This document shows, piece by piece, positions 9,029 to 64,000 of a stretch of DNA of 64,000 nt. How positions within the stretch are numbered: the stretch's first letter is position 1; each line of letters begins with the position of its first letter. Location: positions 167,648 through 231,647 of the IMG/VR virus record IMGVR_UViG_3300030616_000016. One strand, 5' to 3'. A program made the position numbers and the translations under genes. The notes under the pieces were generated by a model. That model did no database searches, had not been told where the DNA came from, and saw only the letters and a program-made list of their open reading frames with translations.

Positions 9029-9793
9029 ATGGGAGAATTATGCGAGGCCTATCTAGGTCCAGAATATCTTCCAGGTCCTCTTATATCGGGTGAATATTTA
9101 AAAGGTGAGGTGGCAGAAGATCCAATTTTGTCACCTCATCTTGCACCTTATATCGCCGCTCTATTAAAGAAGTACGACGATATATTTCATGTTAAGTATA
9201 ATGATCAGGATTTTATAATCCGGCCATTGACTTCAAATGAATATAAGATACTGTGTAAGCTTAGGTTATACTTCGATCCTCAATTAGGGTTCGAAAAGAC
9301 AAGGCCTAGGTTTAGTGTTGTAAGCCTAGAAGATATATTTATAGACTGTATTCTTTATCCTGAGAATGTACTTGATATGGATTTAGATGCATATGTTGTT
9401 GATATGCTTATAGAGACTGCAATACAATATTCGGGATGGGATTCACAGGAGGATATATTTGTAACAAAAGCTCAAATGCAAGCTCATGTAACATCAGATC
9501 TATTAGAGGGCATGTTTACATTTATTAGACGAGCACACCCAGGTCTTGGTGATCGCGATCTTGAAAACAAGAATATTATTGATATAATGAAGTTAATAGC
9601 AAGTGCTGAATTGATATTGGATAAGCCATTCGAGATAGTCACCAAAGATGATAAATCAGATGCTTCTAAAATATCAACCGAAGTTATGATCAAAGAAGAC
9701 TTGGCAGGTCTTAATAAGCTTAATATGCAAGGCTTAAATAAGCCGGAGCTAGAATATGCCCGTAACGCCCAGAGAAGAACAGGAAAGAAGTAG
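9029..9793 (+). CDS. Second tail assembly chaperone (paralog of the upstream gene)
   Basis: LKKYDDIFHV...FIIRPLTSNEYK...DCILYP...LIETAIQYSGW parallels the previous protein. It has its own AGAGGA RBS. Confidence 0.68.
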   Translation: MGELCEAYLGPEYLPGPLISGEYLKGEVAEDPILSPHLAPYIAALLKKYDDIFHVKYNDQDFIIRPLTSNEYKILCKLRLYFDPQLGFEKTRPRFSVVSLEDIFIDCILYPENVLDMDLDAYVVDMLIETAIQYSGWDSQEDIFVTKAQMQAHVTSDLLEGMFTFIRRAHPGLGDRDLENKNIIDIMKLIASAELILDKPFEIVTKDDKSDASKISTEVMIKEDLAGLNKLNMQGLNKPELEYARNAQRRTGKK

Positions 9794-23600: not shown

Positions 23601-26600
23601 TGCAGGATCAACAGATGCCATGTTAAATCGCAGAGACTACTTTTTGCAGTTCTTATCTACAAAAGATTTTACCAAAAAGTATTTGTTAAACTTATCACAA
23701 GGTTGTTTTAGTGCTGCATATTATTTCAGAAATCTTTTTGAAGATGAATTAGATAGCAACGAGCAAGCTAAGAAAGCCTTTTATAATTGCATCTCATTTC
23801 TTCTTAGCGAAGCTCTAGAATCTAGTCCTAATTTTGAAGGCTTCTTTGGTGCTTGGATTACAAGACAGGTAGGCCTTTATTCTGAAGACCTAGATAGAAG
23901 TCTTTTGCCCACAAGACAAGAGCCAACTACATTTAATGATCTTAATCTACCTACATATAGAGATGTATTTGGCAAAACAGACTCAGTAGTAATTGAAGAA
24001 AGAAAGAAGTTGATTTCTGACTTGCGTGCTATTAGCATTTATATTCCAGAGATATCATACAATGTAGATACTATATCTAGTCCGTATCAATTTTATTCCG
24101 ACATTGTTACTCAGTATCATGTTGGCAAGAGTAATATTGGCCTTCATATGATTAGCGGTTCTAATTTATATAGATCCCAAGACAAGGCTCTCGATAATGT
24201 ATATGACACTGCAGTAGAAATTTACTCAAAAGAAACTGAGACGATGAAATCTAGGCTGCCTGTTTCTGATGCAGTACTTCCAAGAAATAAAGAGTTTTGG
24301 TCGCGTTTAGACCCAAATGCAATAGCTCGTTCTCCAGATGATGTCGTTGAGCCTGGGTGGATGTATGATCTTCAGTGGGAAGATGTGTCTGATACGGCAT
24401 CTGTTACAATGAACCATCTTAAAAAGGTGCATTCTAATAATGTTAACAAGATATCGCCAATAACAACTAATGACTTAGAAGACAATGACATACTTAACAA
24501 CTATGAAGATCTAACTGTAGGCGATAATTACATAGAAAAGATAAAAGAAGTATCTAGTAAAAAAAGAATGTTCAAAGGGTCGCAAATAGGCGATATTAAC
24601 TTTGCTGAAGTTCCTTTACAGTCTATATCTTCTGTTGATAAGTCTAAAAAGAAGTATCCGTCAAGCGGGACAAGTACTACGACTAACTTGCCTGGTAGTT
24701 TTTCTACTGACTCTATCGATACTGATAGACATACTAACAGATTAACAAGAGATAGATATAAAGACGACAAGATATCTTCTATTAGAAAAGCTTATCCAGG
24801 ATACGCGATATATTTTCTTGAAGAGGATGCAGAGGACTGGGGTTATCTTGATGATTATTACAGGTACGACTCAGTTATATCTTGGGACGTTGTACAATCC
24901 AAAAAAGATATAGACACTGCAGTAGTTAAATTTACTAACTTTAAGGGCGTGTTAAGCAATCAGTCTCCAAACAAAGATCGCCTAAAAGATGAAGTTGTTA
25001 GTGCAACTGAAACTGTTGATGAAAGTATTTCTGAGCCAGTGGATCCTAACTCTGCTTATGAGGGAGACCTAAGTGGTCTAGAAGGGCTGTTAACAGCCTT
25101 TAAGCTTAGACAAGGAACTAGAATTATTATCAAGTCTGGATTTACAACTAAGATTTCTGAGATGGAGACTATATTTACCGGACAAGTGGTCGAAGTATCC
25201 CCTGGAGATATCATCACTGTTATTTGTCAAGGATATGGATCTCAGCTTATGTCTTCCATGAATAAAGAGTTTATGTGGGATGATCATAACTTCCCAGAAA
25301 TATTATCAACGGTTCTTTATGACACAACTTACTTTGGCAAATGGGAGAGATTTGTTGATAGGCTTCCTGGTCAAAGTAAAATGTATAGCGGAACCGTAGG
25401 ATCAATTATTTCTCACAAGCTTATAGGCGATTATTTTCCTAGCACCGCTGATGATAATATATATAGAATAGCAAAACCTCACGATAATTTCTTTAAGTGG
25501 ATGTGGGATTGGGCGTGGGGAACAAATTGGCAAATTCGAGGACCTATTTGGTCTAATATATTGACAATGACAAGATATGTGCCAAATACGATACTAACAA
25601 TTCGTCCTTACGATGGACGAGCTACGCTGATATGGAATGATTATGATGGCTACTATATTGACACTAACCACATAAGCAGTCTTAGTTCTCAAATCGGCCA
25701 TGCTGCCTCGGATTATTTGCTAAGGTCTGGTCTTAAACAAAACGACAACCAGACCAAATCAGAAATGCTTGGTGAGATTTTATCCAATGATATTTTTACA
25801 TCTAATGGATCATCTAGTCCGTATATGAGAAGCGAACAAAGGCTAAGCGATGCCAGGTCAAATTTATACAACCACGGCATATATGATTTTAATGATAAAA
25901 TAGACTTGATTAATGAGGAGCTGATATTAACCATTTTGTCTGATTGGTTCATGGATAAGTTTCTTAAAAATATAATAATTAGTAGTGAAGAGCTATTTTC
26001 AAATCATGTAGTTAAGCTAAGAATGGATTCTACCGTACCAATCTCTATTGAACCTATTCTGAAGACCATGGAAAGACCTAGTCAAAAATATAGCGAAGCT
26101 GTGCCATTTTCTCCGCTTTCTAAGCCTACTGGAAATAGAAAAGTCGAAAGCAAGTTTTATGTGTCTGATGTTAGCGGAAATATTGCAAGGGGTATTATTC
26201 CCATAGCATACTTACTACCAGAAAACGTAAATATTGCTAAAGACAGAGACAATATAAGAATAGATCAAATTAAAAAAATAGTTAGTGCTGTAGTTAGATA
26301 TGCAGAGAATCATCCTGGCATAGGTATCAATATCAAAGACGGCAAAACTATGGATGCTATTATGCAGTCTTTAGATATGGAGAATATCATACCTGGATAC
26401 TTGGCTATGTATGATAGTCGTAATTTCTTAGCTGCATTTGAAATATATCTTCCAATTAGTCGCGAGGTTGTATCGCAGATATTATCGTATTTACTTCCTG
26501 CGATATATGGATCTGTAGACTATGTCAGCAGGAATCCCGGCACATTTTTATCTGACGTAAACAATAGCGCAGATAAACTAAAAGATCCGTATGTACCTCC

Positions 26601-27549
26601 TAATATGAGACCTATAGTCGAAACACACTCTGCGGTTAGTGGTGTAAATATCATTAAAAACAATATTAGAGCTACAATGTCTGAGTCGGCCAATACTGTT
26701 TCTCTCACTAAAGAGGACTCTAATAGTACTATGGAGCTTTCAGTTTCTCCTGGTTTAACAACCAAGCTTGCCAAGTCAATTGTAGACATAAACTGTGAAG
26801 ATGTTCAGGTGAGAACTCAGGCAATATTTGGTGCCCTACAAGAAGAAATGCAGAAAATGTATAGAGGTCTTCTTATTTTATCTGGCAATCCAAGAATTAA
26901 ACCTTATCATTATATTAGAGTAGACGATTATTATAATAGTATGTTTGGATCTATAGAGGTAGATAAGGTTATTCATTCTTTCAATCATAAGAGCGGATTT
27001 ACATCTTCTATTGTTCCTCATATGATTGTTAGAGCCAGAACAGATCGTGGTTATTATGCTGCTATGATGGCAAATGCCGAGGCTGGTTTTAAGACTATGC
27101 TTGGTTTAGGAGCAGCGTTGGCTCTAGCTATAGGTACGTTTGGCATTGGATGGATTGGAATTATAGCTGGTGTTGGCATAGGTATAGGCACTGGAATAAC
27201 AACTAGTAAGTTTCTAGGTCCTGGAGCAGGTCAGCCAGGATGGTTTCTTGGTATACCATACCCCACGTTTTCTGGCCAGGGCTTATTTGATAAATCTAGG
27301 CTCAATCCTGTCAAAATAGCTCCGCTTATATACAAGGGTGCGCCGTATGTTGTTGGGCTTGAGGGATGGGACAATAAACAATGGACATATTCAGAATATA
27401 AACGAGAGCTTATGCGACTATATGAAGCCGGATGGGACAAATTTCATTCGCAAATCTCAGACGCTAAGAACGCTTTGTGGGATGCTGCTGGTGAAGCATA
27501 TCAGGCAGGCCATCATACCGCAGAACATATTTGGTGGAATAGGAGGTAG
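20698..27549 (+). CDS. Giant baseplate hub-like protein with a staphylococcal nuclease (SNase) domain
   Basis: SNase motifs VYDGDTF, YRLFGVDAFET, TYNRVLG, NVGLEMVSQGIA, GLGIWS. Hub-type motifs GTRIIIKSGF...IFTGQVVEV...VICQGYG and SGNPRIKPYHYI...IEVDKVIHSF. C-terminal hydrophobic hairpin. Confidence 0.72.
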   Translation: MNKNIKIGPVQLSVDADSFSISDRKVNTMVPGLRSNIPKVINTGKSRLEYSFSAIFANEEEINTKLRPIIAYFKAVPFITVKSDVLNKLLATRLVSKAVANQSSSYDKLGSNFIQNKLISDLRNAIYEHLLDPIVKSYMNLTVIDKTIIDQFIKEKLGVSLDDINRPALRTLVSRYVELNYYVSKATIPIKGGSNEQQIRELRKHIREKLAGQLKERDVIDRAKTAGIVQVADASDVYDGDTFVVSGTTYRLFGVDAFETVRPGTQLGPGQEKKPEKSYAASAKSFLVDRLVGQNFTLSEVGTRTYNRVLGICESVSPSHGENANVGLEMVSQGIALPSGVASMGRYATIESLPYLKAAKTAAESGLGIWSQSEIQVPELWRKYAQNINNFANPSSPTVLDSDIQELTIKPASVLKQLIDSLIEELEGRTPNIGINFVASAQPILDAYEQSIVSEDKKKEDVDRVSEFIGFPEDLIPSCFAGISYSAVHDLPQAIQAQFHFSVFNHAPYGPTFGFKSDVVQQNGVSAVVSDPDITYSRLVQGYVSKEFLEEPASKQYLTAYTPAKDFTIHYNDVDTIVKKTSKAKLRESDIKTSERVQKSKEMLNKRESVVFIGKRITISPDSGEIEISILEDEEKKQSTVHKLNNIQIESVSCNITNNIVHLPIEAAAIPTAQHIGRGIGSVSLEISSTDENSMAVFRTLEHAIQNAMHISNQYGAPTSFRITNPTINLSGAKDFVFDNIVVSNDRSAPGKYNMRINLVESFNAEEDTEEKLIPKIDFDFKDGSGVAKKVVEALKEHAGSPFYDKFMSTFFPMTKPSRSVSSDIEEYVNTYPLMLLFAHTHKDTPNPVLLDAYGENIGFIESFSNIVNRVKYDNITPKAVNMRDNLIERLYQIDRAWFVDIASSLPINISTAINERNPFSTASSVQDDVRKFSNQSIVFDKDNYNPSYLIKGGKWVIGPWGKGPGATAGSTDAMLNRRDYFLQFLSTKDFTKKYLLNLSQGCFSAAYYFRNLFEDELDSNEQAKKAFYNCISFLLSEALESSPNFEGFFGAWITRQVGLYSEDLDRSLLPTRQEPTTFNDLNLPTYRDVFGKTDSVVIEERKKLISDLRAISIYIPEISYNVDTISSPYQFYSDIVTQYHVGKSNIGLHMISGSNLYRSQDKALDNVYDTAVEIYSKETETMKSRLPVSDAVLPRNKEFWSRLDPNAIARSPDDVVEPGWMYDLQWEDVSDTASVTMNHLKKVHSNNVNKISPITTNDLEDNDILNNYEDLTVGDNYIEKIKEVSSKKRMFKGSQIGDINFAEVPLQSISSVDKSKKKYPSSGTSTTTNLPGSFSTDSIDTDRHTNRLTRDRYKDDKISSIRKAYPGYAIYFLEEDAEDWGYLDDYYRYDSVISWDVVQSKKDIDTAVVKFTNFKGVLSNQSPNKDRLKDEVVSATETVDESISEPVDPNSAYEGDLSGLEGLLTAFKLRQGTRIIIKSGFTTKISEMETIFTGQVVEVSPGDIITVICQGYGSQLMSSMNKEFMWDDHNFPEILSTVLYDTTYFGKWERFVDRLPGQSKMYSGTVGSIISHKLIGDYFPSTADDNIYRIAKPHDNFFKWMWDWAWGTNWQIRGPIWSNILTMTRYVPNTILTIRPYDGRATLIWNDYDGYYIDTNHISSLSSQIGHAASDYLLRSGLKQNDNQTKSEMLGEILSNDIFTSNGSSSPYMRSEQRLSDARSNLYNHGIYDFNDKIDLINEELILTILSDWFMDKFLKNIIISSEELFSNHVVKLRMDSTVPISIEPILKTMERPSQKYSEAVPFSPLSKPTGNRKVESKFYVSDVSGNIARGIIPIAYLLPENVNIAKDRDNIRIDQIKKIVSAVVRYAENHPGIGINIKDGKTMDAIMQSLDMENIIPGYLAMYDSRNFLAAFEIYLPISREVVSQILSYLLPAIYGSVDYVSRNPGTFLSDVNNSADKLKDPYVPPNMRPIVETHSAVSGVNIIKNNIRATMSESANTVSLTKEDSNSTMELSVSPGLTTKLAKSIVDINCEDVQVRTQAIFGALQEEMQKMYRGLLILSGNPRIKPYHYIRVDDYYNSMFGSIEVDKVIHSFNHKSGFTSSIVPHMIVRARTDRGYYAAMMANAEAGFKTMLGLGAALALAIGTFGIGWIGIIAGVGIGIGTGITTSKFLGPGAGQPGWFLGIPYPTFSGQGLFDKSRLNPVKIAPLIYKGAPYVVGLEGWDNKQWTYSEYKRELMRLYEAGWDKFHSQISDAKNALWDAAGEAYQAGHHTAEHIWWNRR

Positions 27550-30322: not shown

Positions 30323-31847
30323 CTTTAAATATCTACCTACTGCTTATGACCCAGAGACCACTAGGTTGGCTAATAGACTGCCTTCTTGGCATCCAATGAG
30401 AACTAAGAGGATGTCTAGTGTAGGACATCAGCTTATGAACTCTACAATGGGCTCTGGTATGTCTGATATCAACTACAGATATCTTGAAGGCATAGACAAT
30501 ACCTTCTTAGGTACATGTCGTACAGATCAAGTTGGGCCTGTATACGTTAAGACTACAAGTAAAAGACCGTCCAGAAGCTCGTCTAATACAAGAAATATGT
30601 TATTTAATGCCGGCTTCGAATGGGCTCCCAGAATATCTGATAAAGCATGGCAATGGTATACGGTTACTGAGAAGATATCAGATCAGACTACAGCAACAGA
30701 CGCTATAACGAGAGACCATACAAGCTATTATTATGGCGGAACCTCTTTGAAGGTTACTCTGGAGCAAGGATACCAGGCTTATATCATACAAAGCGTTACA
30801 AGAAGTTTTAAGGCCAACGAAACCATAGGCATAAGCGTTATGTATAAGGGTGAAAATACTTTGGTTGGCGATGATGGAATACGTTTATACCTTACTGGCG
30901 AGAAGCTATATGATGGTAGCACCACTCCTACATCTGTTGTATATGGCGACGCCGACACTGAAAATATATTTACCAGGCTGACTGAAGACGTACATTTTGC
31001 ACATGATGTCAACAATGTAAACTTCGTCATCAAGATAGTCAATTCCTCTTCAGGAACTATGACGTACTATATAGATGCTGCACAGATGGAACTTGCCGGT
31101 TCTTCCGGGTGGCATATAAGATACGATGATCCAGTATGGTTTGTTGATACAGAGAACAATGGTCCTTTTGATGTATTCTATTCAGATACATATAAACGCC
31201 GCGTGATTTATTGTTCAACTACAGATGATTTCATGCTGAGAACAGCTCCAACAAGAGCGATCCTCTCCACACTTAGTAGAAACATTAGCCTTCAAACTTC
31301 AACAAAAACACATTCGCGTAAGATAGAGTTTGATCGTAAGTCATGGACTACTGAGTTTAAGATAGAAAGCAATCAGATAGTAAGATTCAACTCATCTATC
31401 CCAGACGAGGCATTTGCTACATACAACCTATATGAACTAAACGATGATAATACGTGGTCTGTTAATAGCAGTGCGACTCTTCACGACTTTGTAATAATCG
31501 GTGAGCTTTTATACATTATTGCATATGAAGATTCACAATATGTCCTAAAGATTTGCAATCCAGAAATGAATGAGCCGGAAGATTCATATATCTATGTAAT
31601 CAATACCATACCGATTGAAGATGATTATGAGATATTAAATAGCTCAGTTTCTTCCCTGTCAATAGTACAAGCCACTGGTAGAGATAATCTATTTGCTCTT
31701 GATGTTGAATATCAAGATGGAAGCGAAACAGATACAGTAAGATTTGGGGTTACTTTAATGTACGACTATTATATATATGATGATACCTCCAACCAAATTA
31801 TTACCAGAGAAAATTATAATAATTATGGAGGCATTATAATAACATGA
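30309..31847 (+). CDS. Baseplate/wedge-associated protein with a carbohydrate-binding (CBM4/9-like) domain
   Basis: RNMLFNAGFE...GGTSLKVT...YYIDAAQMEL jelly-roll pattern. Follows the gpJ homolog. Confidence 0.55.
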   Translation: MKESSFKYLPTAYDPETTRLANRLPSWHPMRTKRMSSVGHQLMNSTMGSGMSDINYRYLEGIDNTFLGTCRTDQVGPVYVKTTSKRPSRSSSNTRNMLFNAGFEWAPRISDKAWQWYTVTEKISDQTTATDAITRDHTSYYYGGTSLKVTLEQGYQAYIIQSVTRSFKANETIGISVMYKGENTLVGDDGIRLYLTGEKLYDGSTTPTSVVYGDADTENIFTRLTEDVHFAHDVNNVNFVIKIVNSSSGTMTYYIDAAQMELAGSSGWHIRYDDPVWFVDTENNGPFDVFYSDTYKRRVIYCSTTDDFMLRTAPTRAILSTLSRNISLQTSTKTHSRKIEFDRKSWTTEFKIESNQIVRFNSSIPDEAFATYNLYELNDDNTWSVNSSATLHDFVIIGELLYIIAYEDSQYVLKICNPEMNEPEDSYIYVINTIPIEDDYEILNSSVSSLSIVQATGRDNLFALDVEYQDGSETDTVRFGVTLMYDYYIYDDTSNQIITRENYNNYGGIIIT

Positions 31848-56915: not shown

Positions 56916-57443
56916 ATGACAAAGGCAGAACTTTTAGCGGATCTTGCTACACAGTGCAAGACCATTCTTAGTACTGAATGCGTTGAGACTATTGGAGATG
57001 TAAATCGTTATATTTCTAATGTCTTTACCCTCGGGCAAGATACGAATGGACAACCAATAGCACAGAAGCGTAATGTTAATTGGTATGTGTATGATGAGGG
57101 CGGCGCAGGTGAAGAAGCTGCATATGGCGATAAAGATTTTGTTAATCCGGAAGATAAGAATCCAACCGGTTCAGATTTGATGGATATCAATGGTATTTAT
57201 AATAATGCCGATCTACGCAAGAGAGTTACTGGCGTTATTTGTAAGAATATTCGTACTACAGAAGATGATGCCGTCAGTACAGCATGGACAGAAAAGAGCA
57301 GCGGTATTTTAGATTTGTTCATGGCATGGGTTGCCTCTAATGCAACCATTCAGGCTAATGGTGGATCGGCAAGTGATAGTGACCTTGAGTATGTTGTTAT
57401 TACAGAGGCATGGTCCAATGTAGTAACGGCATTAGGGAGCTAA
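56916..57443 (+). CDS. Hypothetical protein
   Basis: 175 aa with a GGAG RBS after an AT-rich spacer. Confidence 0.6.
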   Translation: MTKAELLADLATQCKTILSTECVETIGDVNRYISNVFTLGQDTNGQPIAQKRNVNWYVYDEGGAGEEAAYGDKDFVNPEDKNPTGSDLMDINGIYNNADLRKRVTGVICKNIRTTEDDAVSTAWTEKSSGILDLFMAWVASNATIQANGGSASDSDLEYVVITEAWSNVVTALGS

Positions 57444-57466
57444 GGCAACTACTTGAGGGTTGTTAG

Positions 57467-60400
57467 ATGGCTTACCCAAGAGCATTATATAAAATACCCA
57501 TAACCATCGATCATACGAAAATCGATGAAGACTTGACAGATTGGACTCTTGTATTCGATCAGAGCTTTGCAGGTGTTCTTACTTCTGAGAATGGACCATT
57601 AGATCAAGACGGAAGAAGGTCTATCTTATCAGATGGTGGCGATATCAGGTTTACAAGCGACTCCGCTGGTTCAACTAGATTACCTGTTGATGTTCGCAAT
57701 GTCTCTCTTGATAATGATCCAGCTAACTCAGAATTAGAAATCGCTGTAAAATGCTCTCCCAGCTCTTCCACAGATACTACAATCTACATGTGGTGGGGTG
57801 ATGCTGACGCCACCCTTCCAGCCGCAAATGACACTTACGGGCAGTACAACGCTTATGATTCTGGTTTCATCGGTGTATGGTCGCTGAGTGAAGACCCCGG
57901 TCCCGGCGGTGCGGGGGACATGAAGGACAGAACAAGTAATCAACTCAACGGGACAGCCCACTCTGACTTTACCGATGCCGACTCAGTTGATGCTAAAGTC
58001 GGGAAAGGCGTCAGATTCCAGGCCGGAAATGACGCCATAACTGTTCCTGATTCAGCAATCTTAAATCCGGGGAGTGAAGTTACTGTAAGCTGTTGTGTCA
58101 ACCATGCATCTATAGTTCCCGGTGTGGGTTTGATTATACATGACTACTCTAACTATAAGTATTTGCTGTACAGTACTACTGGAGGCGTGTACTTCTATAT
58201 CAGAACTGCATCGGGAGTTTCGGTCACTCCCGCACGTGGAGTGGCTACAAGCACTTGGTATCACTTGTGCGGGACATTCGATCGATCATTGAGTAGTGAG
58301 CGTCTCAAGCTGTATGTGAATGGTTCTAAGGAACGCTCAGCTACTGGTTACGATCAAGATATTCAGGCTGGTGATCAAGGTCTCCGTTTCGGAGAATGGT
58401 CCGGCCACTTAAACGGAACGCTTGATGAGGTAAGAGTAAGTAGTGTTGCTCGTTCTGCAGCTTGGATGAAAGCTGATTATAATAATCAGTTCAACATATC
58501 CGGCTTTCAGACTTTTGGACCTATCGAAGACCTTCGTGATCATTCAAGTAAGTCTTCTAAGTCTTCTAAGTCCAGTCGTTCGGGAAGCAGTAAATCTTCC
58601 AAGTCAAGTAAATCAAGTTGGAGCAGTGGAAGTTCAATTAGTTCTGTTTCCTCGGTATCGAGTTCAAGTTCAGGGGAATCCAGTTCAAGTTCTGTATCCA
58701 GTTCGGTTTCAAGTTCTTCGTCTACAAGTAGTTCAAGCGTCAGTTCTTCTTCAAAGAGCAGTTCTTCTTCACAGTCTTCAAGCTCTTCTGATTTTTCTTC
58801 ATCAAGTAGTGTTAGTAGTTCATCAAGCAGTGAATCAAGCAGCTCCAGCTCTTCACAATCTTCAAGTTCAGCAAGTAGTGAGTCTTCGAGTTCAAGTGTT
58901 TCTTCTTCAAGTACCAGCTCTTCAAGCAAGTCCAGTGAATCGAGTTCGTCTTCGGTTAGCAGCAGTAGCTCGTCTTCAATTAGTAGCAGTTCAACTAGTT
59001 CGCAAAGTTCGAGTTCTCAGTCTTCTTCGAGTCAGAGTTCTTCATCTTCTGGTAGTAGCGACAGTTCATCATCTTCTTCGGAATATTCTAGTTCGTCATC
59101 TGATAGTAGTAGTTCCAGTAGCGGGTCTAGCGTATCAAGTTCGAGTCAGTCTTCTTCCAGTTCTGCGTCTTCTGGATCTTCAAGTTCGTCTACAAGCAGT
59201 TCTTCAAAAAGCAGTAGTAGTGGAAGTTCAGAATCAAGCTCGTCTTCAACAAGCAGCTCTTCGGTCAGTTCGAGTAGTGCAAGTAGTGAATCAAGTTCAT
59301 CTTCGGATAGTTCTGGATCTTCTGTTTCCAGTAGTAGTGTCAGTTCTAGTTCGCAAAGCAGTGGATCGTCTTCAAGTTCTAAGAGTAGCAGTAGTCAGTC
59401 TTCATCTAGCGTTTCTAGCGATTCGTCTTCAAGTTCTAAGAGTAGTGAATCCAGTAGTTCGACAAGTTCGTCAAGCATATCGTCACAATCATCAAGCAGC
59501 TCTACTTCCTCTTCGAGTCAGTCTTCGTCAAGTGACAGCTCAAGTTCTATTTCTTCATCTTCGCAAAGCTCGCAATCAAGTTCATCTTCTGTGAGTAGCG
59601 AGTCTAGCAGTTCACAGTCAAGTTCTTCTGTTTCAAGTGAATCAAGTAGTTCCAGTGCGTCAAGTAAAAGCTCATCTAGCCAGAGCTCCTCCTCTGAAAG
59701 CTCTCAATCTTCAAGTTCTTCAGATTCATCAGAGAGTTCAAGCTCTAAGAGTTCGTCTTCTAGAAGTAGTGAAAGCTCCTCTTCTTCATCTGATTTTTCT
59801 TCATCTAGTAGTTCAACCAGTTCTGAGAGTAGCGGATCTTCACAATCGTCTAGTTCTCAATCTTCAGATTCTAGTAGCTCGAAGAGCAGCTCTTCAGTAA
59901 GCAGCTCCTCTTCTGAAAGTTCATCTTCTATAAGTTCTTCTTCAGTTTCTTCTGAGTCGTCTTCTAGCTCAGCAAGCAGCGATTCATCAAGCTCAAGCAC
60001 CTCTTCTTCTTCAAGGTCTTCATCAAGTACAAGCTCAGAGAGTTCAGAATCATCTTCTAGCTCCGATAGCAGCAGCTCTTCTGTTTCCAGCAGTAGTCAA
60101 AGTTCTAGTTCAGAAAGTAGTGAGTCTTCAAGTTCATCTAAAAGCAGTAGCTCATCTTCGATGAGCAGTTCATCAACTAGTAGCCAGTCTTCTTCCAGTA
60201 TTTCTAGCGAATCATCTTCTAGCTCTGTTAGCAGCGAAAGTTCATCTAGTCAATCGTCTTCGAGTCAGTCTTCATCGAGTAGCATTAGTAGCGAGTCCAG
60301 TTCTTCTTCAATAAGTTCTGAATCGAGCACATCTTCTTCAAGTACTTCTTCTTCGAGCAGTGAATCAAGCTCCAGTTATTCTTCTGAATCCAGCGAAAGT

Positions 60401-61084
60401 TCATCCTCGGTTAGCTCTGATTCATCTTCTTCTCAGTCCAGCGTAAGTTCCAGTTCATCTAGGTCTTCATCAAGTGTATCTTCCTCAAGCTCTAGAAGCA
60501 GCAGTTCAAGATCATCTGAGTCTTCTTCTAGTATAAGCTCATCTATAAGCAGTTCTTCAGTCTCAAGTCAATCTAGCTCCAGTAGTCGTTCATCTGGTTC
60601 CAGCACGAGCTCTTCAAGTAGATCAAGCAGCAGTCAGAGCAGTAGAAGTTCAACATCGTCCTCCAGTCATAGTTCATCTGTAAGCAGTAGCTCCAGAAGC
60701 TCTGAGAGTAGCAGCTCGACAAGCAGCTCTTCAACAAGTAGCACAAGCTCATCCAGCCAATCAAGTAGTTCTTCTGTTTCTTCCAGTTCTACAAGTAGTA
60801 GTAGTACGTCTTCTGGTAGCTCTGAGTCTAGTTCATCTTCAACGAGCAGTAGTTCAACTAGTAGTAGTCAGTCCTCTTCTAGTGTTGTTTCAAGCTCGTC
60901 AATGTCATCTGCTTCTAGTACAAGCTCAAGCTCAGCATCAAGCAGAAGCTCATCCTCTTCGCCAAAAGCTATTGATATTCCTAGCAAACCTGATATACTT
61001 ACATGTGCAGAGAGAAGGCAAACTCCAAGTAAACCAGATGTGCTTGGAATAGATTTTAGACCAAGCCAACCAAAAGTCTTATAG
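57467..61084 (+). CDS. DUF2341 + LamG (concanavalin-like) adhesin with an ~806-aa serine-rich tail
   Basis: DUF2341 motifs ITIDHTKI...GGDIRFTSD...DTTIYMWWG. LamG motifs TWYHLCGTFD...KLYVNG...LNGTLDEVRVSSVARSAAW. These are followed by a Ser tract. Confidence 0.82.
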   Translation: MAYPRALYKIPITIDHTKIDEDLTDWTLVFDQSFAGVLTSENGPLDQDGRRSILSDGGDIRFTSDSAGSTRLPVDVRNVSLDNDPANSELEIAVKCSPSSSTDTTIYMWWGDADATLPAANDTYGQYNAYDSGFIGVWSLSEDPGPGGAGDMKDRTSNQLNGTAHSDFTDADSVDAKVGKGVRFQAGNDAITVPDSAILNPGSEVTVSCCVNHASIVPGVGLIIHDYSNYKYLLYSTTGGVYFYIRTASGVSVTPARGVATSTWYHLCGTFDRSLSSERLKLYVNGSKERSATGYDQDIQAGDQGLRFGEWSGHLNGTLDEVRVSSVARSAAWMKADYNNQFNISGFQTFGPIEDLRDHSSKSSKSSKSSRSGSSKSSKSSKSSWSSGSSISSVSSVSSSSSGESSSSSVSSSVSSSSSTSSSSVSSSSKSSSSSQSSSSSDFSSSSSVSSSSSSESSSSSSSQSSSSASSESSSSSVSSSSTSSSSKSSESSSSSVSSSSSSSISSSSTSSQSSSSQSSSSQSSSSSGSSDSSSSSSEYSSSSSDSSSSSSGSSVSSSSQSSSSSASSGSSSSSTSSSSKSSSSGSSESSSSSTSSSSVSSSSASSESSSSSDSSGSSVSSSSVSSSSQSSGSSSSSKSSSSQSSSSVSSDSSSSSKSSESSSSTSSSSISSQSSSSSTSSSSQSSSSDSSSSISSSSQSSQSSSSSVSSESSSSQSSSSVSSESSSSSASSKSSSSQSSSSESSQSSSSSDSSESSSSKSSSSRSSESSSSSSDFSSSSSSTSSESSGSSQSSSSQSSDSSSSKSSSSVSSSSSESSSSISSSSVSSESSSSSASSDSSSSSTSSSSRSSSSTSSESSESSSSSDSSSSSVSSSSQSSSSESSESSSSSKSSSSSSMSSSSTSSQSSSSISSESSSSSVSSESSSSQSSSSQSSSSSISSESSSSSISSESSTSSSSTSSSSSESSSSYSSESSESSSSVSSDSSSSQSSVSSSSSRSSSSVSSSSSRSSSSRSSESSSSISSSISSSSVSSQSSSSSRSSGSSTSSSSRSSSSQSSRSSTSSSSHSSSVSSSSRSSESSSSTSSSSTSSTSSSSQSSSSSVSSSSTSSSSTSSGSSESSSSSTSSSSTSSSQSSSSVVSSSSMSSASSTSSSSASSRSSSSSPKAIDIPSKPDILTCAERRQTPSKPDVLGIDFRPSQPKVL
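58544..60961 (+). repeat. Low-complexity poly-serine coding tract (806 codons)
   Basis: Near-continuous Ser punctuated by K/E/D/Q/V/T/R. TCN and AGY codons are mixed, and no long perfect nucleotide repeat was seen. Confidence 0.95.
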
Positions 61085-61096
61085 AGGTGATATATC

Positions 61097-61591
61097 ATGG
61101 ATTTAACATTTAGTTTTGCGGCGCCATCAACACAACCAGGAAGCGATGATGTCACTACCATAAAAATATGGGAAAGTACAGACGCCATTGCTTTTACTCT
61201 TGTAAAGACGGACAGCCTTAGTCCTTCTGACACCACATATACATACACAGATGGATATGTGGACAGATTTTATAGGCTTACGTTTGTTGATGACGATGGT
61301 CTTGAAAGCCCATATTCTGATACAATGTATGGAACCGCGCTGATTAGCAACACAACACTCACAAGTATAGATACTGTAAACACTCAGTTGGCTGAGCTTT
61401 TAGCACTAATTAATGCAAGACCAACAAGAAGAGAAATGACATCTGCTGTAGATGCTTATGGTGATATGCTGAATGAATTGGCCGCGCAGGTTAATACTCT
61501 AAAGAATAACGTGGAAACGCTTCAGAGATCCGTTACTTCTCTTGGACAGACGTTTGCAAATTGGGTAGAGAATCCGCCTTGCCCGCAGTAG
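61097..61591 (+). CDS. FN3-like beta domain plus coiled-coil protein
   Basis: IKIWES...TTYTYTDG...FYRLTFVDDDGLESPYS (FN3-like), then heptads. GAGGTG RBS. Confidence 0.6.
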   Translation: MDLTFSFAAPSTQPGSDDVTTIKIWESTDAIAFTLVKTDSLSPSDTTYTYTDGYVDRFYRLTFVDDDGLESPYSDTMYGTALISNTTLTSIDTVNTQLAELLALINARPTRREMTSAVDAYGDMLNELAAQVNTLKNNVETLQRSVTSLGQTFANWVENPPCPQ

Positions 61592-61600
61592 GAGGTAATC

Positions 61601-62929
61601 ATGGCTATTACATTATGGCAACCAGGAACAACTGGATACCCTGAAGTATCTGACTATGCTAGCTCTAGTGACAGAACAATTGAGACCAAATGGTCTTTTA
61701 TAAGTGATGTTTTATCAGACGAACCATTCGCAGAAGTCGGCCAGGCTATAAATACTTACCATATTAATGCGTTACGTCGCTGTATTGAAATATTAGAAAC
61801 TCACGTACACACTTTTCATCCTTGCTTCGATCAAGCTTTTGGCAATACCGCACAGCAAACATTCCCTGTCTCAATTTCTCAAGACTATCCTAGCTCTACA
61901 TGGACTGGTAAGCACTATGTTGTTTTAGATGATAGCGGTACAGAAATAAGTGCTCCATCCAAAGATGGCACTGATTCAGATGGAAACTATAATCGTAATA
62001 CCACAAGATATGTAAGTCGTGTTGTTCCTGATCTATATACTCCAACTGTTGGTTGTCCCGCAAGCCAAAAGATTAATTACAGACAGTCTGGTACGTACCT
62101 AACCCCCAACTCTACTTATGCTGCCTCTTCTACTCCTGTCGTTACTGCTGACTCTATAAATGCAGATCACATAAATCAATTGCGTCGTGCTGTTGAAAGT
62201 TTAATGAATCATACTCACGACTTTAGATTCAGATTATATCAAGACCCACCTAGTGTCTCTACCAATTTTAGACAATATCTTAACATCATAGGCTCTTTAG
62301 GTGCTCCTGCTCCTCCTTATCCGATTAGCATAGGCAATCCGTCGTCTAACTGGTTCGGTGGTGGTATTAGTAATTCTTCTATCGCTTTGCAGAATAACAC
62401 AGATGAGCCAACAGCTGCTCATGTCAATCATATAAAAGAAGTACTGTTTTATTTATTGAAACATAGACACAAGGACAGTTCGTATTCTACATATGACCCG
62501 AGCTATTGGTTCACAACTGGTGCATGGAGGGCTGTTCAGTATGGCGGTTCTCCGTATTGGTACAAAGCAGGAGCTGGGTCTGGTGGTAACTGGCCTATGA
62601 ATATCTGGCTTCCTGCAGGTAGATATTTGCTTGTATATAAAGACGGACAAATTTATAATACCAGAGGAAACCAATATCCTACAAGAATAAATTATCTACA
62701 AGGTTACCAATTTCCTTCTAGCGTAAGCAATGTTTTGAGTCAAAGCTTTGTCGATGTTGTTTCTCCATTATATTTGAGTTTACAAACAGATGGCTATGTA
62801 TCATTATGGGAATATGATCAGGCAGGAGAAACAGGCGATAACACCGGCCAAATAAATTTCTGGTTATATAAAGAAAGCACATGGCCTAATATACCAGAAG
62901 ACACTGGTGGATTTTATGAGTACATCTAA
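61601..62929 (+). CDS. Putative fibre/adhesin with three HIN-LRR-HxH repeats
   Basis: INTYHINALRRCIEILETHVH, INADHINQLRRAVESLMNHTH, PTAAHVNHIKEVLFYLLKHRH, then an aromatic-rich C-terminal domain. GGAGGT RBS. Confidence 0.6.
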   Translation: MAITLWQPGTTGYPEVSDYASSSDRTIETKWSFISDVLSDEPFAEVGQAINTYHINALRRCIEILETHVHTFHPCFDQAFGNTAQQTFPVSISQDYPSSTWTGKHYVVLDDSGTEISAPSKDGTDSDGNYNRNTTRYVSRVVPDLYTPTVGCPASQKINYRQSGTYLTPNSTYAASSTPVVTADSINADHINQLRRAVESLMNHTHDFRFRLYQDPPSVSTNFRQYLNIIGSLGAPAPPYPISIGNPSSNWFGGGISNSSIALQNNTDEPTAAHVNHIKEVLFYLLKHRHKDSSYSTYDPSYWFTTGAWRAVQYGGSPYWYKAGAGSGGNWPMNIWLPAGRYLLVYKDGQIYNTRGNQYPTRINYLQGYQFPSSVSNVLSQSFVDVVSPLYLSLQTDGYVSLWEYDQAGETGDNTGQINFWLYKESTWPNIPEDTGGFYEYI

Positions 62930-63234
62930 TGGTATATGTTAATAAGTTCGATATCAACAAGAATTCTAATGCTAGAGAACTACAACAGTTCCTTTCTGAA
63001 AACAGCATCAGCTCTGGTAAGATACTTAAAATAGAAAGCATTCCCAGGAACGATGACTTTCTTAGTATTATAATATTCTGGACTGATGAAGATATAAGCA
63101 GCTCTATAGAAGTTGCATTTGAAGAGACAGAGTCACAGGCTACCAGAGCTGTTATAGATGCACGCATAGGCACTGAGAATGACGGTGCTAATAATGGAAA
63201 ATTAATATTAAGAACCGGAATTATTCCGCAATGA
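62929..63234 (+). CDS. Small protein paralogous to the N-terminus of the next gene
   Basis: KFDINKNSNARELQQFLSENSI...IIIFWTD versus KFDIPSNSDAANIQDFMKANDI...VIIFYID. Confidence 0.65.
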   Translation: MVYVNKFDINKNSNARELQQFLSENSISSGKILKIESIPRNDDFLSIIIFWTDEDISSSIEVAFEETESQATRAVIDARIGTENDGANNGKLILRTGIIPQ

Positions 63235-63995
63235 GCTTAAACCAGATCGTTAAATCAGCCAAGTTTGATATTCCGTCAAACAGCGATGCTGCTAATATCC
63301 AGGACTTTATGAAGGCCAATGATATTACAGCATCCAAGCTTGTTGATGTTGAATGTATATATAGAAGCGATAACATGCAGACTGTTATTATCTTTTATAT
63401 TGATGGTGAGCTTGAGGATCTAGTTCAACCAAGAGGCCCTCAGGGACCACAAGGAAAACCTGGCGCTCAAGGTCCAAAAGGAGAGCGTGGAAGATCAGGG
63501 ACTGATGGCGATATATATATGGAGGCAGTCTGTGTATATTACTACAGAAAGATTGATGGATCTCCCGATTATGACTCTGATCCTAACCATGTTTGCTGTA
63601 AATATTTAGATGAGCCGCTAACATTCCCTGATTTCTCTGAAGAAGTAGACGATTGGGAGCCTGGTCAGTATTACGAGACAGACGAGTGGGTGGCTTATTC
63701 AAGCGTTAGGCAATGCGATCCTAACTCTCCATTCGATAACCCATGCTGTCCTCCATGTAAGCCGTGCTTTTCTTCTTATTCGTCATACAGTAGCAACTCA
63801 AGTTCTAACTCATCTTCTTCGAGTATATCTTCGTCAAGCAAAAGCTCTTCTAGCTTTAGCTCGTCAGTTAGCTCTAGCAATTCTTCAAGTAGTAGTTCAT
63901 CTAATTCTTCAAGTAGTAGTTCATCTAATTCTTCAAGTAGTAGTTCATCTAATTCTTCAAGTAGTAGTTCATCTAATTCTTCAAGTAGTAGTTAA
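63231..63995 (+). CDS. Collagen-repeat, Cys-rich, serine-rich protein (3' end uncertain)
   Basis: Eight Gly-X-Y triplets (63435-63506), CC-rich segments, then a Ser tract. The stop arises inside a tandem repeat copy. Confidence 0.7.
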   Translation: MSLNQIVKSAKFDIPSNSDAANIQDFMKANDITASKLVDVECIYRSDNMQTVIIFYIDGELEDLVQPRGPQGPQGKPGAQGPKGERGRSGTDGDIYMEAVCVYYYRKIDGSPDYDSDPNHVCCKYLDEPLTFPDFSEEVDDWEPGQYYETDEWVAYSSVRQCDPNSPFDNPCCPPCKPCFSSYSSYSSNSSSNSSSSSISSSSKSSSSFSSSVSSSNSSSSSSSNSSSSSSSNSSSSSSSNSSSSSSSNSSSSS

Positions 63996-64000
63996 TCTAA
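63879..64000 (+). repeat. 24-bp tandem repeat AATTCTTCAAGTAGTAGTTCATCT (NSSSSSSS), 5 copies, continuing to the window edge
   Basis: Copies start at 63879, 63903, 63927, 63951 and 63975. The fifth copy has TCA>TAA. Confidence 0.95.

What the first reader, a model, noticed from the sequence alone, without database searches (positions are those of the whole stretch)
57467..61084. Phage adhesin with an 806-residue serine tract maintained at protein level
Seen: about 2.4 kb of mostly Ser codons, mixing TCN and AGY with no long perfect repeat, so the tract looks old and selected rather than recent slippage. Charge is patterned: Lys-rich at the start (SSKSSKSSK), mostly Glu/Asp/Gln in the middle, Arg-rich near the end. 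The protein ends in three PS[KQ]P units. Known: streptococcal and staphylococcal serine-rich repeat adhesins are O-glycosylated stalks that project a binding domain. Inference: a long, possibly glycosylated tether presenting a LamG lectin, anchored to the virion by the C-terminal PSKP peptide.
Basis: partly seen in the sequence, partly recalled or inferred. Interest (0 to 1): 0.66.

Follow-up and report, generated by a model that had tools for sequence, protein, structure and literature searches.

The report
Phage lectin on 806-serine tether
A 232-kb marine-sediment phage encodes, among its tail genes, a sugar-binding-type domain followed by an 806-residue, 78%-serine disordered tether and a short conserved end-peptide; relatives preserve the serines while the binding domain is swapped between phages, so it looks like an unusually long flexible "fishing line" for catching host cells.

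Summary
Window 57467-61084 (+) is one 1,205-aa ORF with four parts:
- a DUF2341+LamG (ConA-like) cassette, aa 1-355
- a 25-aa Lys-rich motif
- an 806-aa tract that is 77.5% Ser
- a 40-aa tail with three PS[KQ]P units

The tract is not a slippage array. All six Ser codons are mixed at random and the longest exact repeat is 23 nt. The non-Ser spacers follow an X-SS-X-SSSS grammar and exclude Pro, Asn, Cys and Leu. Most of their codons lie at least 2 mutations from any Ser codon.

A related phage keeps the Lys motif, the Ser positions (61/62) and the tail (32/40) through synonymous and TCN<->AGY changes. Its lectin cassette, however, is replaced (26% identity). Our LamG half is 87% nt-identical to that of a different phage lineage.

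So the conserved chassis is C-terminal and the swapped head is N-terminal. I read this as a reversed-polarity receptor-binding tether in the tail module of a jumbo myovirus.

The genome also holds two more Ser-tract fibre genes, tRNA-Ser(UGA) and tRNA-Ser(GCU), at least 5 glycosyltransferases and 3 sulfotransferases.

Modification, virion location and the anchor partner are untested. Full tract length rests on one assembly; independent pieces reach at most 1.6 kb.

The parts
57467..61084 (+). Whole gene, 1205 aa plus stop. GAGGG Shine-Dalgarno-like site at 57455-57459. Tightly packed in a + strand operon.
57467..57886 (+). N-terminal beta-sandwich (about aa 1-140), DUF2341-type half of the cassette. 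About 58% aa identity to P0001.
   Evidence: Homologs carry PF10102. The ortholog P0127 hits PF10102 at E 3.6e-5. AF2 pLDDT is 96-98 over this part. Identity profile. Pfam did not report DUF2341 directly on the target at E<=0.1.
58025..58462 (+). Laminin_G_3 / ConA-like jelly roll (Pfam aa 187-332; structural domain about aa 145-350). About 90% aa and 87% nt identity to the LamG of P0001 from another phage lineage.
   Evidence: 821x-deep P0001-like contig in run X2
58544..58618 (+). Lys-rich onset motif, (SSK)3-SSRSG-(SSK)3-SS, aa 360-384. The 22-aa core is identical in Ser-gene 3 of this genome and in the ortholog of a related phage, but encoded with many synonymous and TCN<->AGY differences.
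58544..60961 (+). Polyserine tract, aa 360-1165, 806 aa, 77.5% Ser. Grammar X-SS-X-SSSS(S). No Pro, Asn, Cys or Leu. Predicted without structure.
60962..61081 (+). C-terminal 40-aa peptide with three PS[KQ]P-type units (two PSKPD[IV]L, one PSQPKVL). 32/40 identical in the relative L022, with 10 synonymous changes. Unique in this genome. Candidate virion-docking peptide (inferred).
56916..57443 (+). Upstream 175-aa gene with no family match. The relative has 201-aa and 53-aa genes here.
61097..61591 (+). Downstream 164-aa gene (small beta domain plus predicted coiled coil). 82% identical and syntenic in the relative L022. Candidate partner, untested in effect.
63231..64000 (+). Second Ser-tract fibre gene. 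It has an N-domain, a collagen-like triplet run, a Cys-rich module and a Ser tract with perfect 24-nt tandem repeats. It runs off the contig end and continues at genome 2-775 with a 190-aa C-terminal domain.

Best explanation
The gene encodes a virion appendage of a jumbo myovirus that works as a very long, flexible, single-chain tether for a swappable glycan-binding head.

The proposed parts and roles are:
- Head: the N-terminal DUF2341+LamG (ConA-like) cassette is the distal binding module.
- Spacer: the 806-residue polyserine tract is an intrinsically disordered, highly hydrated spacer. Its contour length is about 290-305 nm. Its random-coil end-to-end distance is about 26 nm if unmodified (my estimate).
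- Onset element: the conserved Lys-rich motif where the tract begins is a functional element of unknown role, possibly a hinge or a recognition site for a modifying enzyme.
- Anchor: the conserved 40-aa C-terminal peptide, with three PS[KQ]P-type units, docks the chain on a tail or baseplate protein.

The tether would enlarge the capture radius for reversible first contact with host surface or matrix glycans in sediment or biofilm.

Shown here:
- the anatomy
- protein-level selection on Ser identity and spacer position
- conservation of the motif and the tail
- exchange of the head between phages
- the tail-module context
- the same grammar in two more fibre-type genes
- phage tRNA-Ser genes and glyco/sulfo enzymes in the genome

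Inferred only:
- disorder
- virion location
- docking by the C-terminal peptide
- glycan binding
- any O-glycosylation or sulfation of the tract
For: 1. Anatomy. The AF2 model of aa 1-359 has pLDDT 89 and pTM 0.91. It matches lectin-type jelly rolls in PDB and many phage ConA-like proteins.

2. Selection on the tract:
- 127 of 181 spacer codons are at least 2 nt from any Ser codon.
- The one-step neighbours P, N, C and L are absent (expected 16.5, 11.8, 20.9, 7.5).
- Spacers lie 2 or fewer residues apart only 6 times, against 72 expected.
- Against the ortholog fragment L022, the last 80 tract residues have 61 Ser-Ser positions (19 third-base changes and 7 TCN<->AGY switches).
- That block has 1 Ser<->X change, while 13 of 18 spacer residues changed identity in place.

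3. Chassis versus head:
- The relative L015 is fully syntenic; the one flanking gene compared (the 431-aa gene) is 72% identical.
- At the same slot it carries a DUF2341+LamG cassette only 26% identical to ours.
- That cassette is followed by the identical Lys motif and a Ser tract.
- L022 keeps the C-terminal peptide at 80%.
- Our LamG half is 87% nt-identical to P0001, which sits behind the terminase and portal of another phage. The similarity stops just before the Lys motif.

4. Context: tail sheath, baseplate wedge, tail-fibre-like and virion structural proteins lie upstream. A minor-tail-like gene lies just beyond.

5. Independent precedent for a Ser linker tethering this cassette to a virion part. 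P0005 has an N-terminal head-completion-like domain (PF05521, E 3e-4, below cut-off). It also has a Ser-rich linker of about 340 aa and two cassettes, and it sits between capsid and HK97-gp10-like genes.

6. Supply and possible modification:
- tRNA-Ser(UGA) and tRNA-Ser(GCU) are adjacent in the phage tRNA block.
- About 1,117 Ser codons occur in the three Ser-tract genes.
- GT2 and GT4 glycosyltransferases.
- Three sulfotransferases.
Against: - There is no evidence of expression or of presence in virions. No RNA run holds the sequence.
- No trimerisation element is visible, unlike ordinary fibres and unlike Ser-gene 2, which has a collagen-like run.
- Cassette-only relatives (P0004, P0002) and head-module locations (P0001, Desulfofustis phage 'capsid protein') allow another reading: the cassette itself could be the part that sits on the virion.
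- The single complex prediction (C-terminal peptide against 3 copies of the downstream 164-aa protein) gave no answer.
- L015 (5' part) and L022 (3' part) come from two runs (with near-consecutive accession numbers) and need not be one genome.
- The low-pLDDT fold of the tract was made without an alignment, so it is weak evidence for disorder.
- Three of the glycosyltransferases lie beside DNA-metabolism genes. They may serve DNA or host-envelope modification instead.
Confidence: 0.5

Rival explanations
1. The polyserine chain itself is the working surface, and the cassette is the part fixed to the particle. In this reading the chain forms a mucin-like, heavily hydrated brush, possibly O-glycosylated, sulfated or phosphorylated. 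The brush would control sticking of the virion to sediment minerals, EPS or non-host cells, or shield it.
For: - Relatives made of cassettes alone, or sitting in head or neck modules.
- At least 5 glycosyltransferases, 3 sulfotransferases, an acetyltransferase, an oxidoreductase, methyltransferases and a Pkinase-like ORF in the genome.
- A strict spacer grammar that would suit an enzyme recognition pattern.
- Net acidic tract.
Against: - The part conserved between relatives includes the C-terminal peptide (80% identity, with synonymous changes).
- The cassette is replaced between relatives (26% identity) and exchanged with other phages. That is the pattern expected of a distal specificity module, not of an anchor.
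- A free end would not need a conserved tri-repeat peptide.
Confidence: 0.2
2. The protein is not a virion component. It would be a soluble or lysis-released lectin-tether, acting for example on the host envelope or matrix (a decoy, biofilm binder or superinfection modifier). The Ser tract would then be an oversized interdomain linker of the polyserine-linker type.
For: - No recognisable virion-anchoring domain and no trimerisation motif.
- Composition like the polyserine linkers of secreted carbohydrate-active enzymes (PMC2699552, PMC2386152).
Against: - No signal peptide.
- The gene is embedded, same strand and tightly packed, in the baseplate/fibre block between virion structural proteins and fibre-like genes.
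- Two sister Ser-tract genes carry collagen-like and fibre-type modules.
Confidence: 0.12
3. The tract is an assembly artefact, a chimera of low-complexity reads, or a decaying non-expressed ORF.
For: - No independent record spans the whole tract.
- Many short 'joints' appear in low-complexity sequence.
- Other frames are also open across the tract.
- A sister gene breaks the contig in a perfect 24-nt repeat.
Against: - Identical pieces occur in two studies and in an ENA assembly, including 1,623 contiguous bp.
- The frame joins a folded domain to a conserved C-terminal peptide.
- The ortholog in a relative keeps the Lys motif, the tract and the tail under clear purifying selection.
- The spacer grammar and the residue exclusions cannot arise by decay.
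Confidence: 0.04

Closest known systems
Polyserine linkers (PSL) of secreted carbohydrate-active enzymes in Saccharophagus degradans, Teredinibacter turnerae and Cellvibrio japonicus
   Same: - Nearly the same composition: 77.5% Ser here, against averages of 80-83% (PMC2699552).
- It joins a carbohydrate-binding-type (ConA-like) module to the rest of the protein.
- It uses mixed Ser codons and is thought to be a flexible spacer.
   Different: - PSLs average 39-44 residues (PMC2699552). This tract has 806, about 18-20 times longer.
- It is in a phage tail-module protein without a signal peptide.
- It starts with a conserved Lys-rich motif and obeys an X-SS-X-SSSS grammar.
- It ends in a 40-aa peptide, not in a catalytic domain.
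Serine-rich repeat adhesins of Gram-positive cocci (GspB, Fap1, SraP, PsrP)
   Same: A long Ser-rich stalk is combined with a lectin-type binding region. Glycosyltransferase genes are present in the same genome. The function proposed here (projecting a binding domain) is the same.
   Different: - No long signal peptide and no LPXTG anchor.
- No Ser-X dipeptide repeat (family features from my own knowledge).
- The binding domain is terminal rather than lying between two repeat regions.
- It is viral, and nothing shows glycosylation.
Phage receptor-binding and fibre proteins with exchangeable LamG/ConA-like modules (for example the ConA-like virion proteins of cyanophages found by fold search)
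   Same: - A ConA-like jelly roll in a phage structural module.
- A conserved attachment part combined with a horizontally exchanged specificity part.
   Different: - Polarity is reversed: conserved C-terminus, variable N-terminus.
- There is no trimeric shaft. A disordered 806-aa chain takes the place of a folded fibre.
Glycosylated virion proteins of mycobacteriophages (Freeman et al. 2023, cited in PMC12582341; paper not held, content from my own knowledge)
   Same: A phage that carries its own glycosyltransferases and has Ser/Thr-rich targets on virion proteins.
   Different: There the targets are short C-terminal extensions of capsid and tail-tube proteins, and glycosylation was shown experimentally. 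Here it is only suggested by gene content.

Membership tests
DUF2341 + Laminin_G_3 cassette proteins | Laminin_G_3 (PF13385) domain over Pfam's threshold | tested here: met
   E 4.4e-18, 66.3 bits against a cut-off of 27.6, aa 187-332. ConA-like fold in the AF2 model.
DUF2341 + Laminin_G_3 cassette proteins | DUF2341 (PF10102) domain N-terminal to LamG | tested here: inconclusive
   Pfam gave no PF10102 hit on the target at E<=0.1. However, aa 1-359 align end to end (E down to 1e-119) with proteins that carry PF10102, and the ortholog P0127 hits PF10102 at E 3.6e-5.
Polyserine linker (PSL) | About 80% Ser, non-repetitive at the DNA level, placed next to a carbohydrate-binding-type module | tested here: met
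   77.5% Ser, mixed codons, follows the LamG domain. Reference values from PMC2699552.
Polyserine linker (PSL) | Short interdomain spacer (tens of residues) between two folded modules of a secreted enzyme | tested here: not met
   806 aa. The C-terminal side is a 40-aa peptide. No signal peptide and no catalytic domain.
Serine-rich repeat adhesins (SRRP) | Extended N-terminal signal peptide and C-terminal LPXTG cell-wall anchor | tested here: not met
   The N-terminus runs straight into the beta-sandwich. The C-terminus holds the PS[KQ]P-type units and no LPXTG (sequence).
Serine-rich repeat adhesins (SRRP) | Ser-X dipeptide repeat regions flanking a binding region | tested here: not met
   Spacer distances are 3, 5 and 6, not 2. 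There is one tract only, and the binding domain is terminal.
Serine-rich repeat adhesins (SRRP) | Dedicated GtfA/GtfB glycosylation and accessory SecA2/SecY2 export | not tested
   GT4-family genes exist, but orthology to GtfA/B was not examined. SecA2/Y2 was not searched.
Phage tail fibre / receptor-binding protein | Encoded in the tail/baseplate module | tested here: met
   Sheath, baseplate wedge, fibre-like and virion structural genes lie on the same strand around it.
Phage tail fibre / receptor-binding protein | Conserved attachment part plus exchangeable specificity part | tested here: met
   C-terminal peptide 80% identical and Lys motif 100% identical, against a cassette at 26% in the relative. 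LamG half 87% nt-identical to another phage. Polarity is reversed relative to the usual fibre.
Phage tail fibre / receptor-binding protein | Physical presence in the virion; oligomeric shaft | not testable with these tools
   No proteome or EM data. No coiled coil or collagen run in this protein.
Mucin-like O-glycosylated domain | Dense O-glycans on Ser/Thr | not testable with these tools
   Only gene content is available: at least 5 glycosyltransferases, 3 sulfotransferases, an acetyltransferase and an oxidoreductase.

The most novel reading that the evidence does not exclude
The phage makes its own 'viral mucins'. Its glycosyltransferases and sulfotransferases would O-glycosylate and sulfate the X-SS-X-SSSS tracts of three fibre proteins in the host cytoplasm. 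The conserved Lys-rich onset motif would act as the priming or recognition site. The virion would then carry bottle-brush filaments up to about 300 nm long that present swappable lectin heads: a phage-built glycocalyx with reversed-polarity receptor-binding proteins.
Probability: 0.2. Interest if true: 0.85.

Novelty: new variant of a known kind. Interest (0 to 1): 0.62.

Why it matters
If this reading is right, it shows a third way to build a phage adhesin. Folded trimeric fibres and Ig-like decorations are the known ways. Here a single disordered homopolymer-like chain, hundreds of nanometres in contour length, would carry a plug-in lectin.

It would extend polyserine linkers from 40-residue spacers in bacterial enzymes to 800-residue tethers in viruses.

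It also gives a clean natural example of selection for residue identity and spacing without selection for sequence.

The co-occurrence with phage tRNA-Ser genes and with glycosyl- and sulfotransferases makes virion glycosylation outside actinobacteriophages directly testable.

Practically, such tracts break short-read assemblies. Two relatives and a sister gene end in them, so this class of phage protein is probably under-counted in metagenomes.

Tried and rejected
- Complex prediction of the C-terminal 45 aa against three copies of the downstream 164-aa protein: no answer (score 0.09, mark 0.34). This is not evidence either way.
- phmmer of the C-terminal peptide against 1.84 billion representatives: one weak hit (E 1e-4) with repeated DIPSKP-like units. 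It was not informative.
- ESM Atlas look-alike search on aa 340-1205: no usable hit.
- megablast of 24 kb against the phage collection: no match.
- IMG/VR scans with the 431-aa neighbour, the 164-aa neighbour and the cassette found no true relatives.
- The JGI metagenome scan found only the source contig.
- Tract length in relatives could not be measured. The L015 contig ends inside the tract, L022 starts inside it, and a third relative's contig had no DNA on hand.
- Hypothesis that the Lys motif is a DNA-level recombination site: rejected. The three copies differ at many synonymous sites and blastn finds no extended identity there.
- Hypothesis that the tract is a decayed short tandem repeat: not supported by autocorrelation or TRF.
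- Host assignment. The CRISPR-repeat search gave one Deltaproteobacteria MAG with a near-identical type I-E repeat, but no spacer matches either way. This is only a lead.
- Hypothesis that the nearby reverse transcriptase is a diversity-generating retroelement aimed at the fibre genes: no template/variable repeat pair found.
- APS kinase: absent.
- Single-sequence AF2 of aa 342-641: pLDDT 38 and no secondary structure. This is compatible with disorder but weak.
- Papers on PSL definition (Howard 2004) and on mycobacteriophage glycosylation (Freeman 2023) are not held.


Full report
**1. What is there**

The ORF at window 57467..61084 (+) is real and codes for 1,205 residues. A GAGGG Shine-Dalgarno-like site lies 7 nt before the ATG. 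The gene is packed 23 nt after the previous gene and 12 nt before the next.

Residues 360-1165 are the tract: exactly 806 residues, 625 of them Ser (77.5%). Residues 1-359 give a confident two-domain AlphaFold model (71-sequence alignment, pLDDT 89.4, pTM 0.91).
- The first domain is an N-terminal beta-sandwich of the DUF2341 type.
- The second is a Laminin_G_3 jelly roll (Pfam E 4e-18, aa 187-332).

The model matches lectin-type jelly rolls in the PDB, including carbohydrate-binding domain 4 of AbnA and the lectin domain of trans-sialidase. It also matches pentraxin and the lectin-like half of clostridial neurotoxin binding fragments. It matches hundreds of ConA-like proteins of phages as well. 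The last 40 residues carry PSKP, PSKP and PSQP units.

**2. The tract is kept at the protein level and is not a recent slippage product**

- All six Ser codons occur (TCT 163, AGT 160, TCA 119, AGC 101, TCG 46, TCC 36).
- The longest exact repeat is 23 nt.
- TRF sees only 2-3-copy micro-arrays.
- No lag stands out in nucleotide autocorrelation.
- TCN and AGY codons alternate as often as chance predicts: 310 switches against 303.5 expected.

The 181 non-Ser residues are not mutational debris.
- 127 of their codons are at least 2 nt from any Ser codon.
- The one-step neighbours Pro, Asn, Cys and Leu are entirely missing (expected 16.5, 11.8, 20.9, 7.5).
- Two spacers lie within 2 residues of each other only 6 times, against 72 expected.

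The result is a loose X-SS-X-SSSS(S) grammar. The same grammar, and the same absence of Pro and Cys, holds in the tracts of a third Ser gene of this genome and in a relative's ortholog.

A single-sequence AlphaFold run of aa 342-641 gives pLDDT 38 and no secondary structure. That is compatible with disorder but is weak evidence.

**3. Assembly**

The window is the last 64 kb of a single 231,647-bp IMG/VR record, rated 95% complete by CheckV. Two marine-sediment metagenomes from two studies hold the stretch.
- X1 has a contig identical over 58465-60087 (1,623 bp) and further identical pieces.
- X2 has four identical pieces inside and at the end of the tract.
- An ENA contig is identical over 60847-62454.

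No independent record crosses the whole tract. The listed 'joints' have sides of only 20-30 nt in low-complexity sequence, and I read them as cross-matches. The tract is therefore real, but its exact length rests on one assembly.

**4. Genomic setting**

The window is the structural block of a jumbo myovirus. It holds a tail sheath, major-head-like genes, and three giant ORFs of 1,812-2,283 aa. It also holds a baseplate wedge, a fibre-like gene and virion structural proteins, and the target gene follows these.

Both contig ends lie in one perfect 24-nt tandem repeat inside a second Ser-tract gene. So the genome is probably circular or permuted and was broken there.

That second gene has a small N-domain, a collagen-like run, a Cys-rich module, a Ser tract and a 190-aa C-terminal domain.

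A third gene (genome 4443-6401) has, in order:
- a Ser tract
- a domain with a sub-threshold ConA-like CBM hit
- the same Lys-rich motif
- a second Ser tract
- the same Cys-rich module

Only these three genes have Ser tracts. Polyserine is therefore this phage's general way of joining fibre modules. Gene 2 shows the young, slippage-made state and the target shows the old, diverged state.

**5. Relatives decide the polarity**

The 359-aa cassette has many relatives (124 hits). Almost none has a Ser tract.

The closest, P0001 (78% identity), sits behind the terminase and portal genes of a different phage. It continues with other repeats and a second LamG. Identity is mosaic: about 58% in the DUF2341 half, but about 90% aa and 87% nt in the LamG half. 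The similarity ends just before the Lys motif. A P0001-like contig is 821x deep in run X2.

A true relative of the jumbo phage is L015. Its gene order is the same, and the 431-aa neighbour is 72% identical. At the same slot it carries a DUF2341+LamG cassette only 26% identical to ours. That cassette is followed by the identical 22-aa Lys motif and a Ser tract, in which the contig ends.

The three copies of the motif differ at many synonymous sites, including TCN<->AGY.

A second fragment, L022, holds the other end of an ortholog:
- 273 residues of tract
- a C-terminal peptide 32/40 identical, with 10 synonymous changes
- the downstream 164-aa gene at 82% identity

In the last 80 tract residues, 61 of 62 Ser positions stay Ser, with 19 third-base changes and 7 class switches. 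Meanwhile 13 of 18 spacers change residue without moving.

So the conserved part is Lys motif + tract + C-terminal peptide, and the exchanged part is the lectin cassette. That is the signature of a receptor-binding protein, with the usual polarity reversed.

P0005 is an independent precedent for the same design. It has a head-completion-like N-domain (PF05521, E 3e-4, below cut-off), a Ser-rich linker of about 340 aa and two cassettes. It lies between capsid and HK97-gp10-like genes.

**6. Supply and possible modification**

The genome has 21 tRNA genes, including adjacent tRNA-Ser(UGA) and tRNA-Ser(GCU). Between them, the anticodon wobble rules (my knowledge) would cover AGY and most UCN codons. 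The three Ser-tract genes hold about 1,117 Ser codons.

Near the fibre genes, across the contig junction:
- two sulfotransferases
- a GT2 glycosyltransferase
- a hexapeptide acetyltransferase
- a GFO/IDH/MocA oxidoreductase
- a radical SAM enzyme

A second cluster at 36-41 kb:
- two methyltransferases
- a GT2
- a third sulfotransferase
- a GT4

Two more GT4 genes lie at 68-71 kb, among DNA-metabolism genes. A Pkinase-like ORF exists. No APS kinase was found.

This makes O-glycosylation, sulfation or phosphorylation of the tracts possible. Nothing here links these enzymes to the tracts.

**7. Mechanism proposed**

I propose a single-chain tether with the following features:
- Contour length is about 290-305 nm.
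- As a free coil, Rg is about 10.5 nm and the end-to-end distance about 26 nm; it would be longer if glycosylated (my estimate).
- It is fixed by its C-terminal tri-repeat peptide to a tail or baseplate protein.
- It presents an exchangeable ConA-like head for reversible first contact with glycans.

Steps shown and steps inferred are listed under the best explanation.

I put 0.5 on this reading. The rivals are: the chain itself as a mucin-like working surface with the cassette as anchor (0.2); a non-virion lectin-tether (0.12); an artefact (0.04).

**8. Comparison and novelty**

In composition the tract equals the polyserine linkers of Saccharophagus and Teredinibacter enzymes, which are 80-83% Ser and average 39-44 residues (PMC2699552, PMC2386152). 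It is about 20 times longer, viral, and flanked by conserved elements.

It is not a member of the Gram-positive serine-rich repeat adhesins. It has no signal peptide, no LPXTG and no dipeptide repeats.

LamG-bearing phage virion proteins are common. I found no paper describing a polyserine tether in a phage.

I rate it a new variant of known kinds.

- Read laying was given 4,701 letters.
- Only genetic code 11 was used.
- No broken toxin gene is involved. The fold resemblance to neurotoxin binding fragments is the generic lectin jelly roll only.

Noticed in passing
window 63231-64000, continuing at genome 2-775 (L005): Second Ser-tract fibre gene: a small N-domain, a collagen-like run, a Cys-rich module, a Ser tract with a perfect 24-nt (SSSSSSSN) tandem array, and a 190-aa C-terminal domain. 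Both contig ends lie in this array, so the 'linear' record is probably a circular or permuted genome broken by the repeat. The copy number of the repeat is unknown.
   Followed up: partly
genome 4443-6401 (L005): Third Ser-tract gene, 652 aa. In order it has a Ser tract, a domain with a sub-threshold ConA-like CBM hit, the same Lys-rich motif, a second Ser tract, and the same Cys-rich module (DDWxPGxYY...CDPN...CCPPC) as gene 2. Full-length Pfam scans of Ser-tract proteins return nothing; the domains must be scanned alone.
   Followed up: partly
window 62929-63234, 63231-63420; L005 1815-2120: Three paralogous N-terminal domains of about 60 aa (FDIxxNS...). The L005 copy has the domain, the collagen-like run and the first residues of the Cys-rich module, then stops. 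It looks like a truncated or recombined fibre gene.
   Followed up: no
genome 13759-19924 (L005), arrays at 14437-14926, 21249-21968, 22600-22892: The phage carries a type I-E-like set: Cas3 C-terminal/helicase, Cse1, Cse2, Cas7, Cas5 and Cas6e-like. It also has three CRISPR arrays (29-nt repeat, 61-nt period, at least 21 spacers). The only species genome with a repeat matching the search pattern (26-27 of 29 nt identical) is a Deltaproteobacteria MAG (JAHDQN010000049.1, 31 repeats). No spacer matches were found either way.
   Followed up: partly
genome 797-1807, 7045-12024, 36483-41249 (L005, L006, L019): Two clusters of glycan-type enzymes. Together they hold three sulfotransferases (PF13469/PF00685, PF00685, PF17784), two GT2 and one GT4. 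They also hold a hexapeptide acetyltransferase, a GFO/IDH/MocA oxidoreductase and two methyltransferases. Two more GT4 genes lie at 68316-71136. No APS kinase was found.
   Followed up: partly
genome 8381-10546; 43593-45647; 62327-67049: LAGLIDADG-bearing insertions. One is an intein-like insert in a radical SAM gene. One is an intein in a Volactin-type actin homologue (PF25216). The third is a LAGLIDADG ORF lying between the PHP/polymerase part and the HHH part of a DNA polymerase III alpha gene.
   Followed up: no
genome 71438-72586: Reverse transcriptase (RVT_1, E 8e-20) next to RecA and RuvC. No template/variable repeat pair was found within 69-76 kb against the genome, so nothing points to a diversity-generating retroelement.
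   Followed up: partly
genome 99805-100218 (L025): Protein-kinase-like domain (Pkinase, E 6e-8) in a 552-aa frame. It could be a Ser/Thr kinase. No link to the Ser tracts is shown.
   Followed up: no
window 9756-27549: Three consecutive giant ORFs of 1,812, 1,834 and 2,283 aa. Only the last has a family match (an endolysin-like domain near aa 2010-2122). The other two match no PHROG.
   Followed up: no
window 61601-62929: A 442-aa protein with no family match. It carries three spaced copies of a His-rich motif (H-x-N-x-L-R ... H-x-H-x-F), reminiscent of metal-binding fibre repeats.
   Followed up: no
window 57832-58467, run X2: A 716-nt contig at 821x depth in a second sediment study is about 92% identical to the LamG part. 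It continues into P0001-like sequence. So the same LamG module rides in a far more abundant phage of that habitat.
   Followed up: partly
genome 23384-35625: Block of 21 tRNA genes on the minus strand, with tRNA-Ser(UGA) and tRNA-Ser(GCU) adjacent at 31290-31490.
   Followed up: partly
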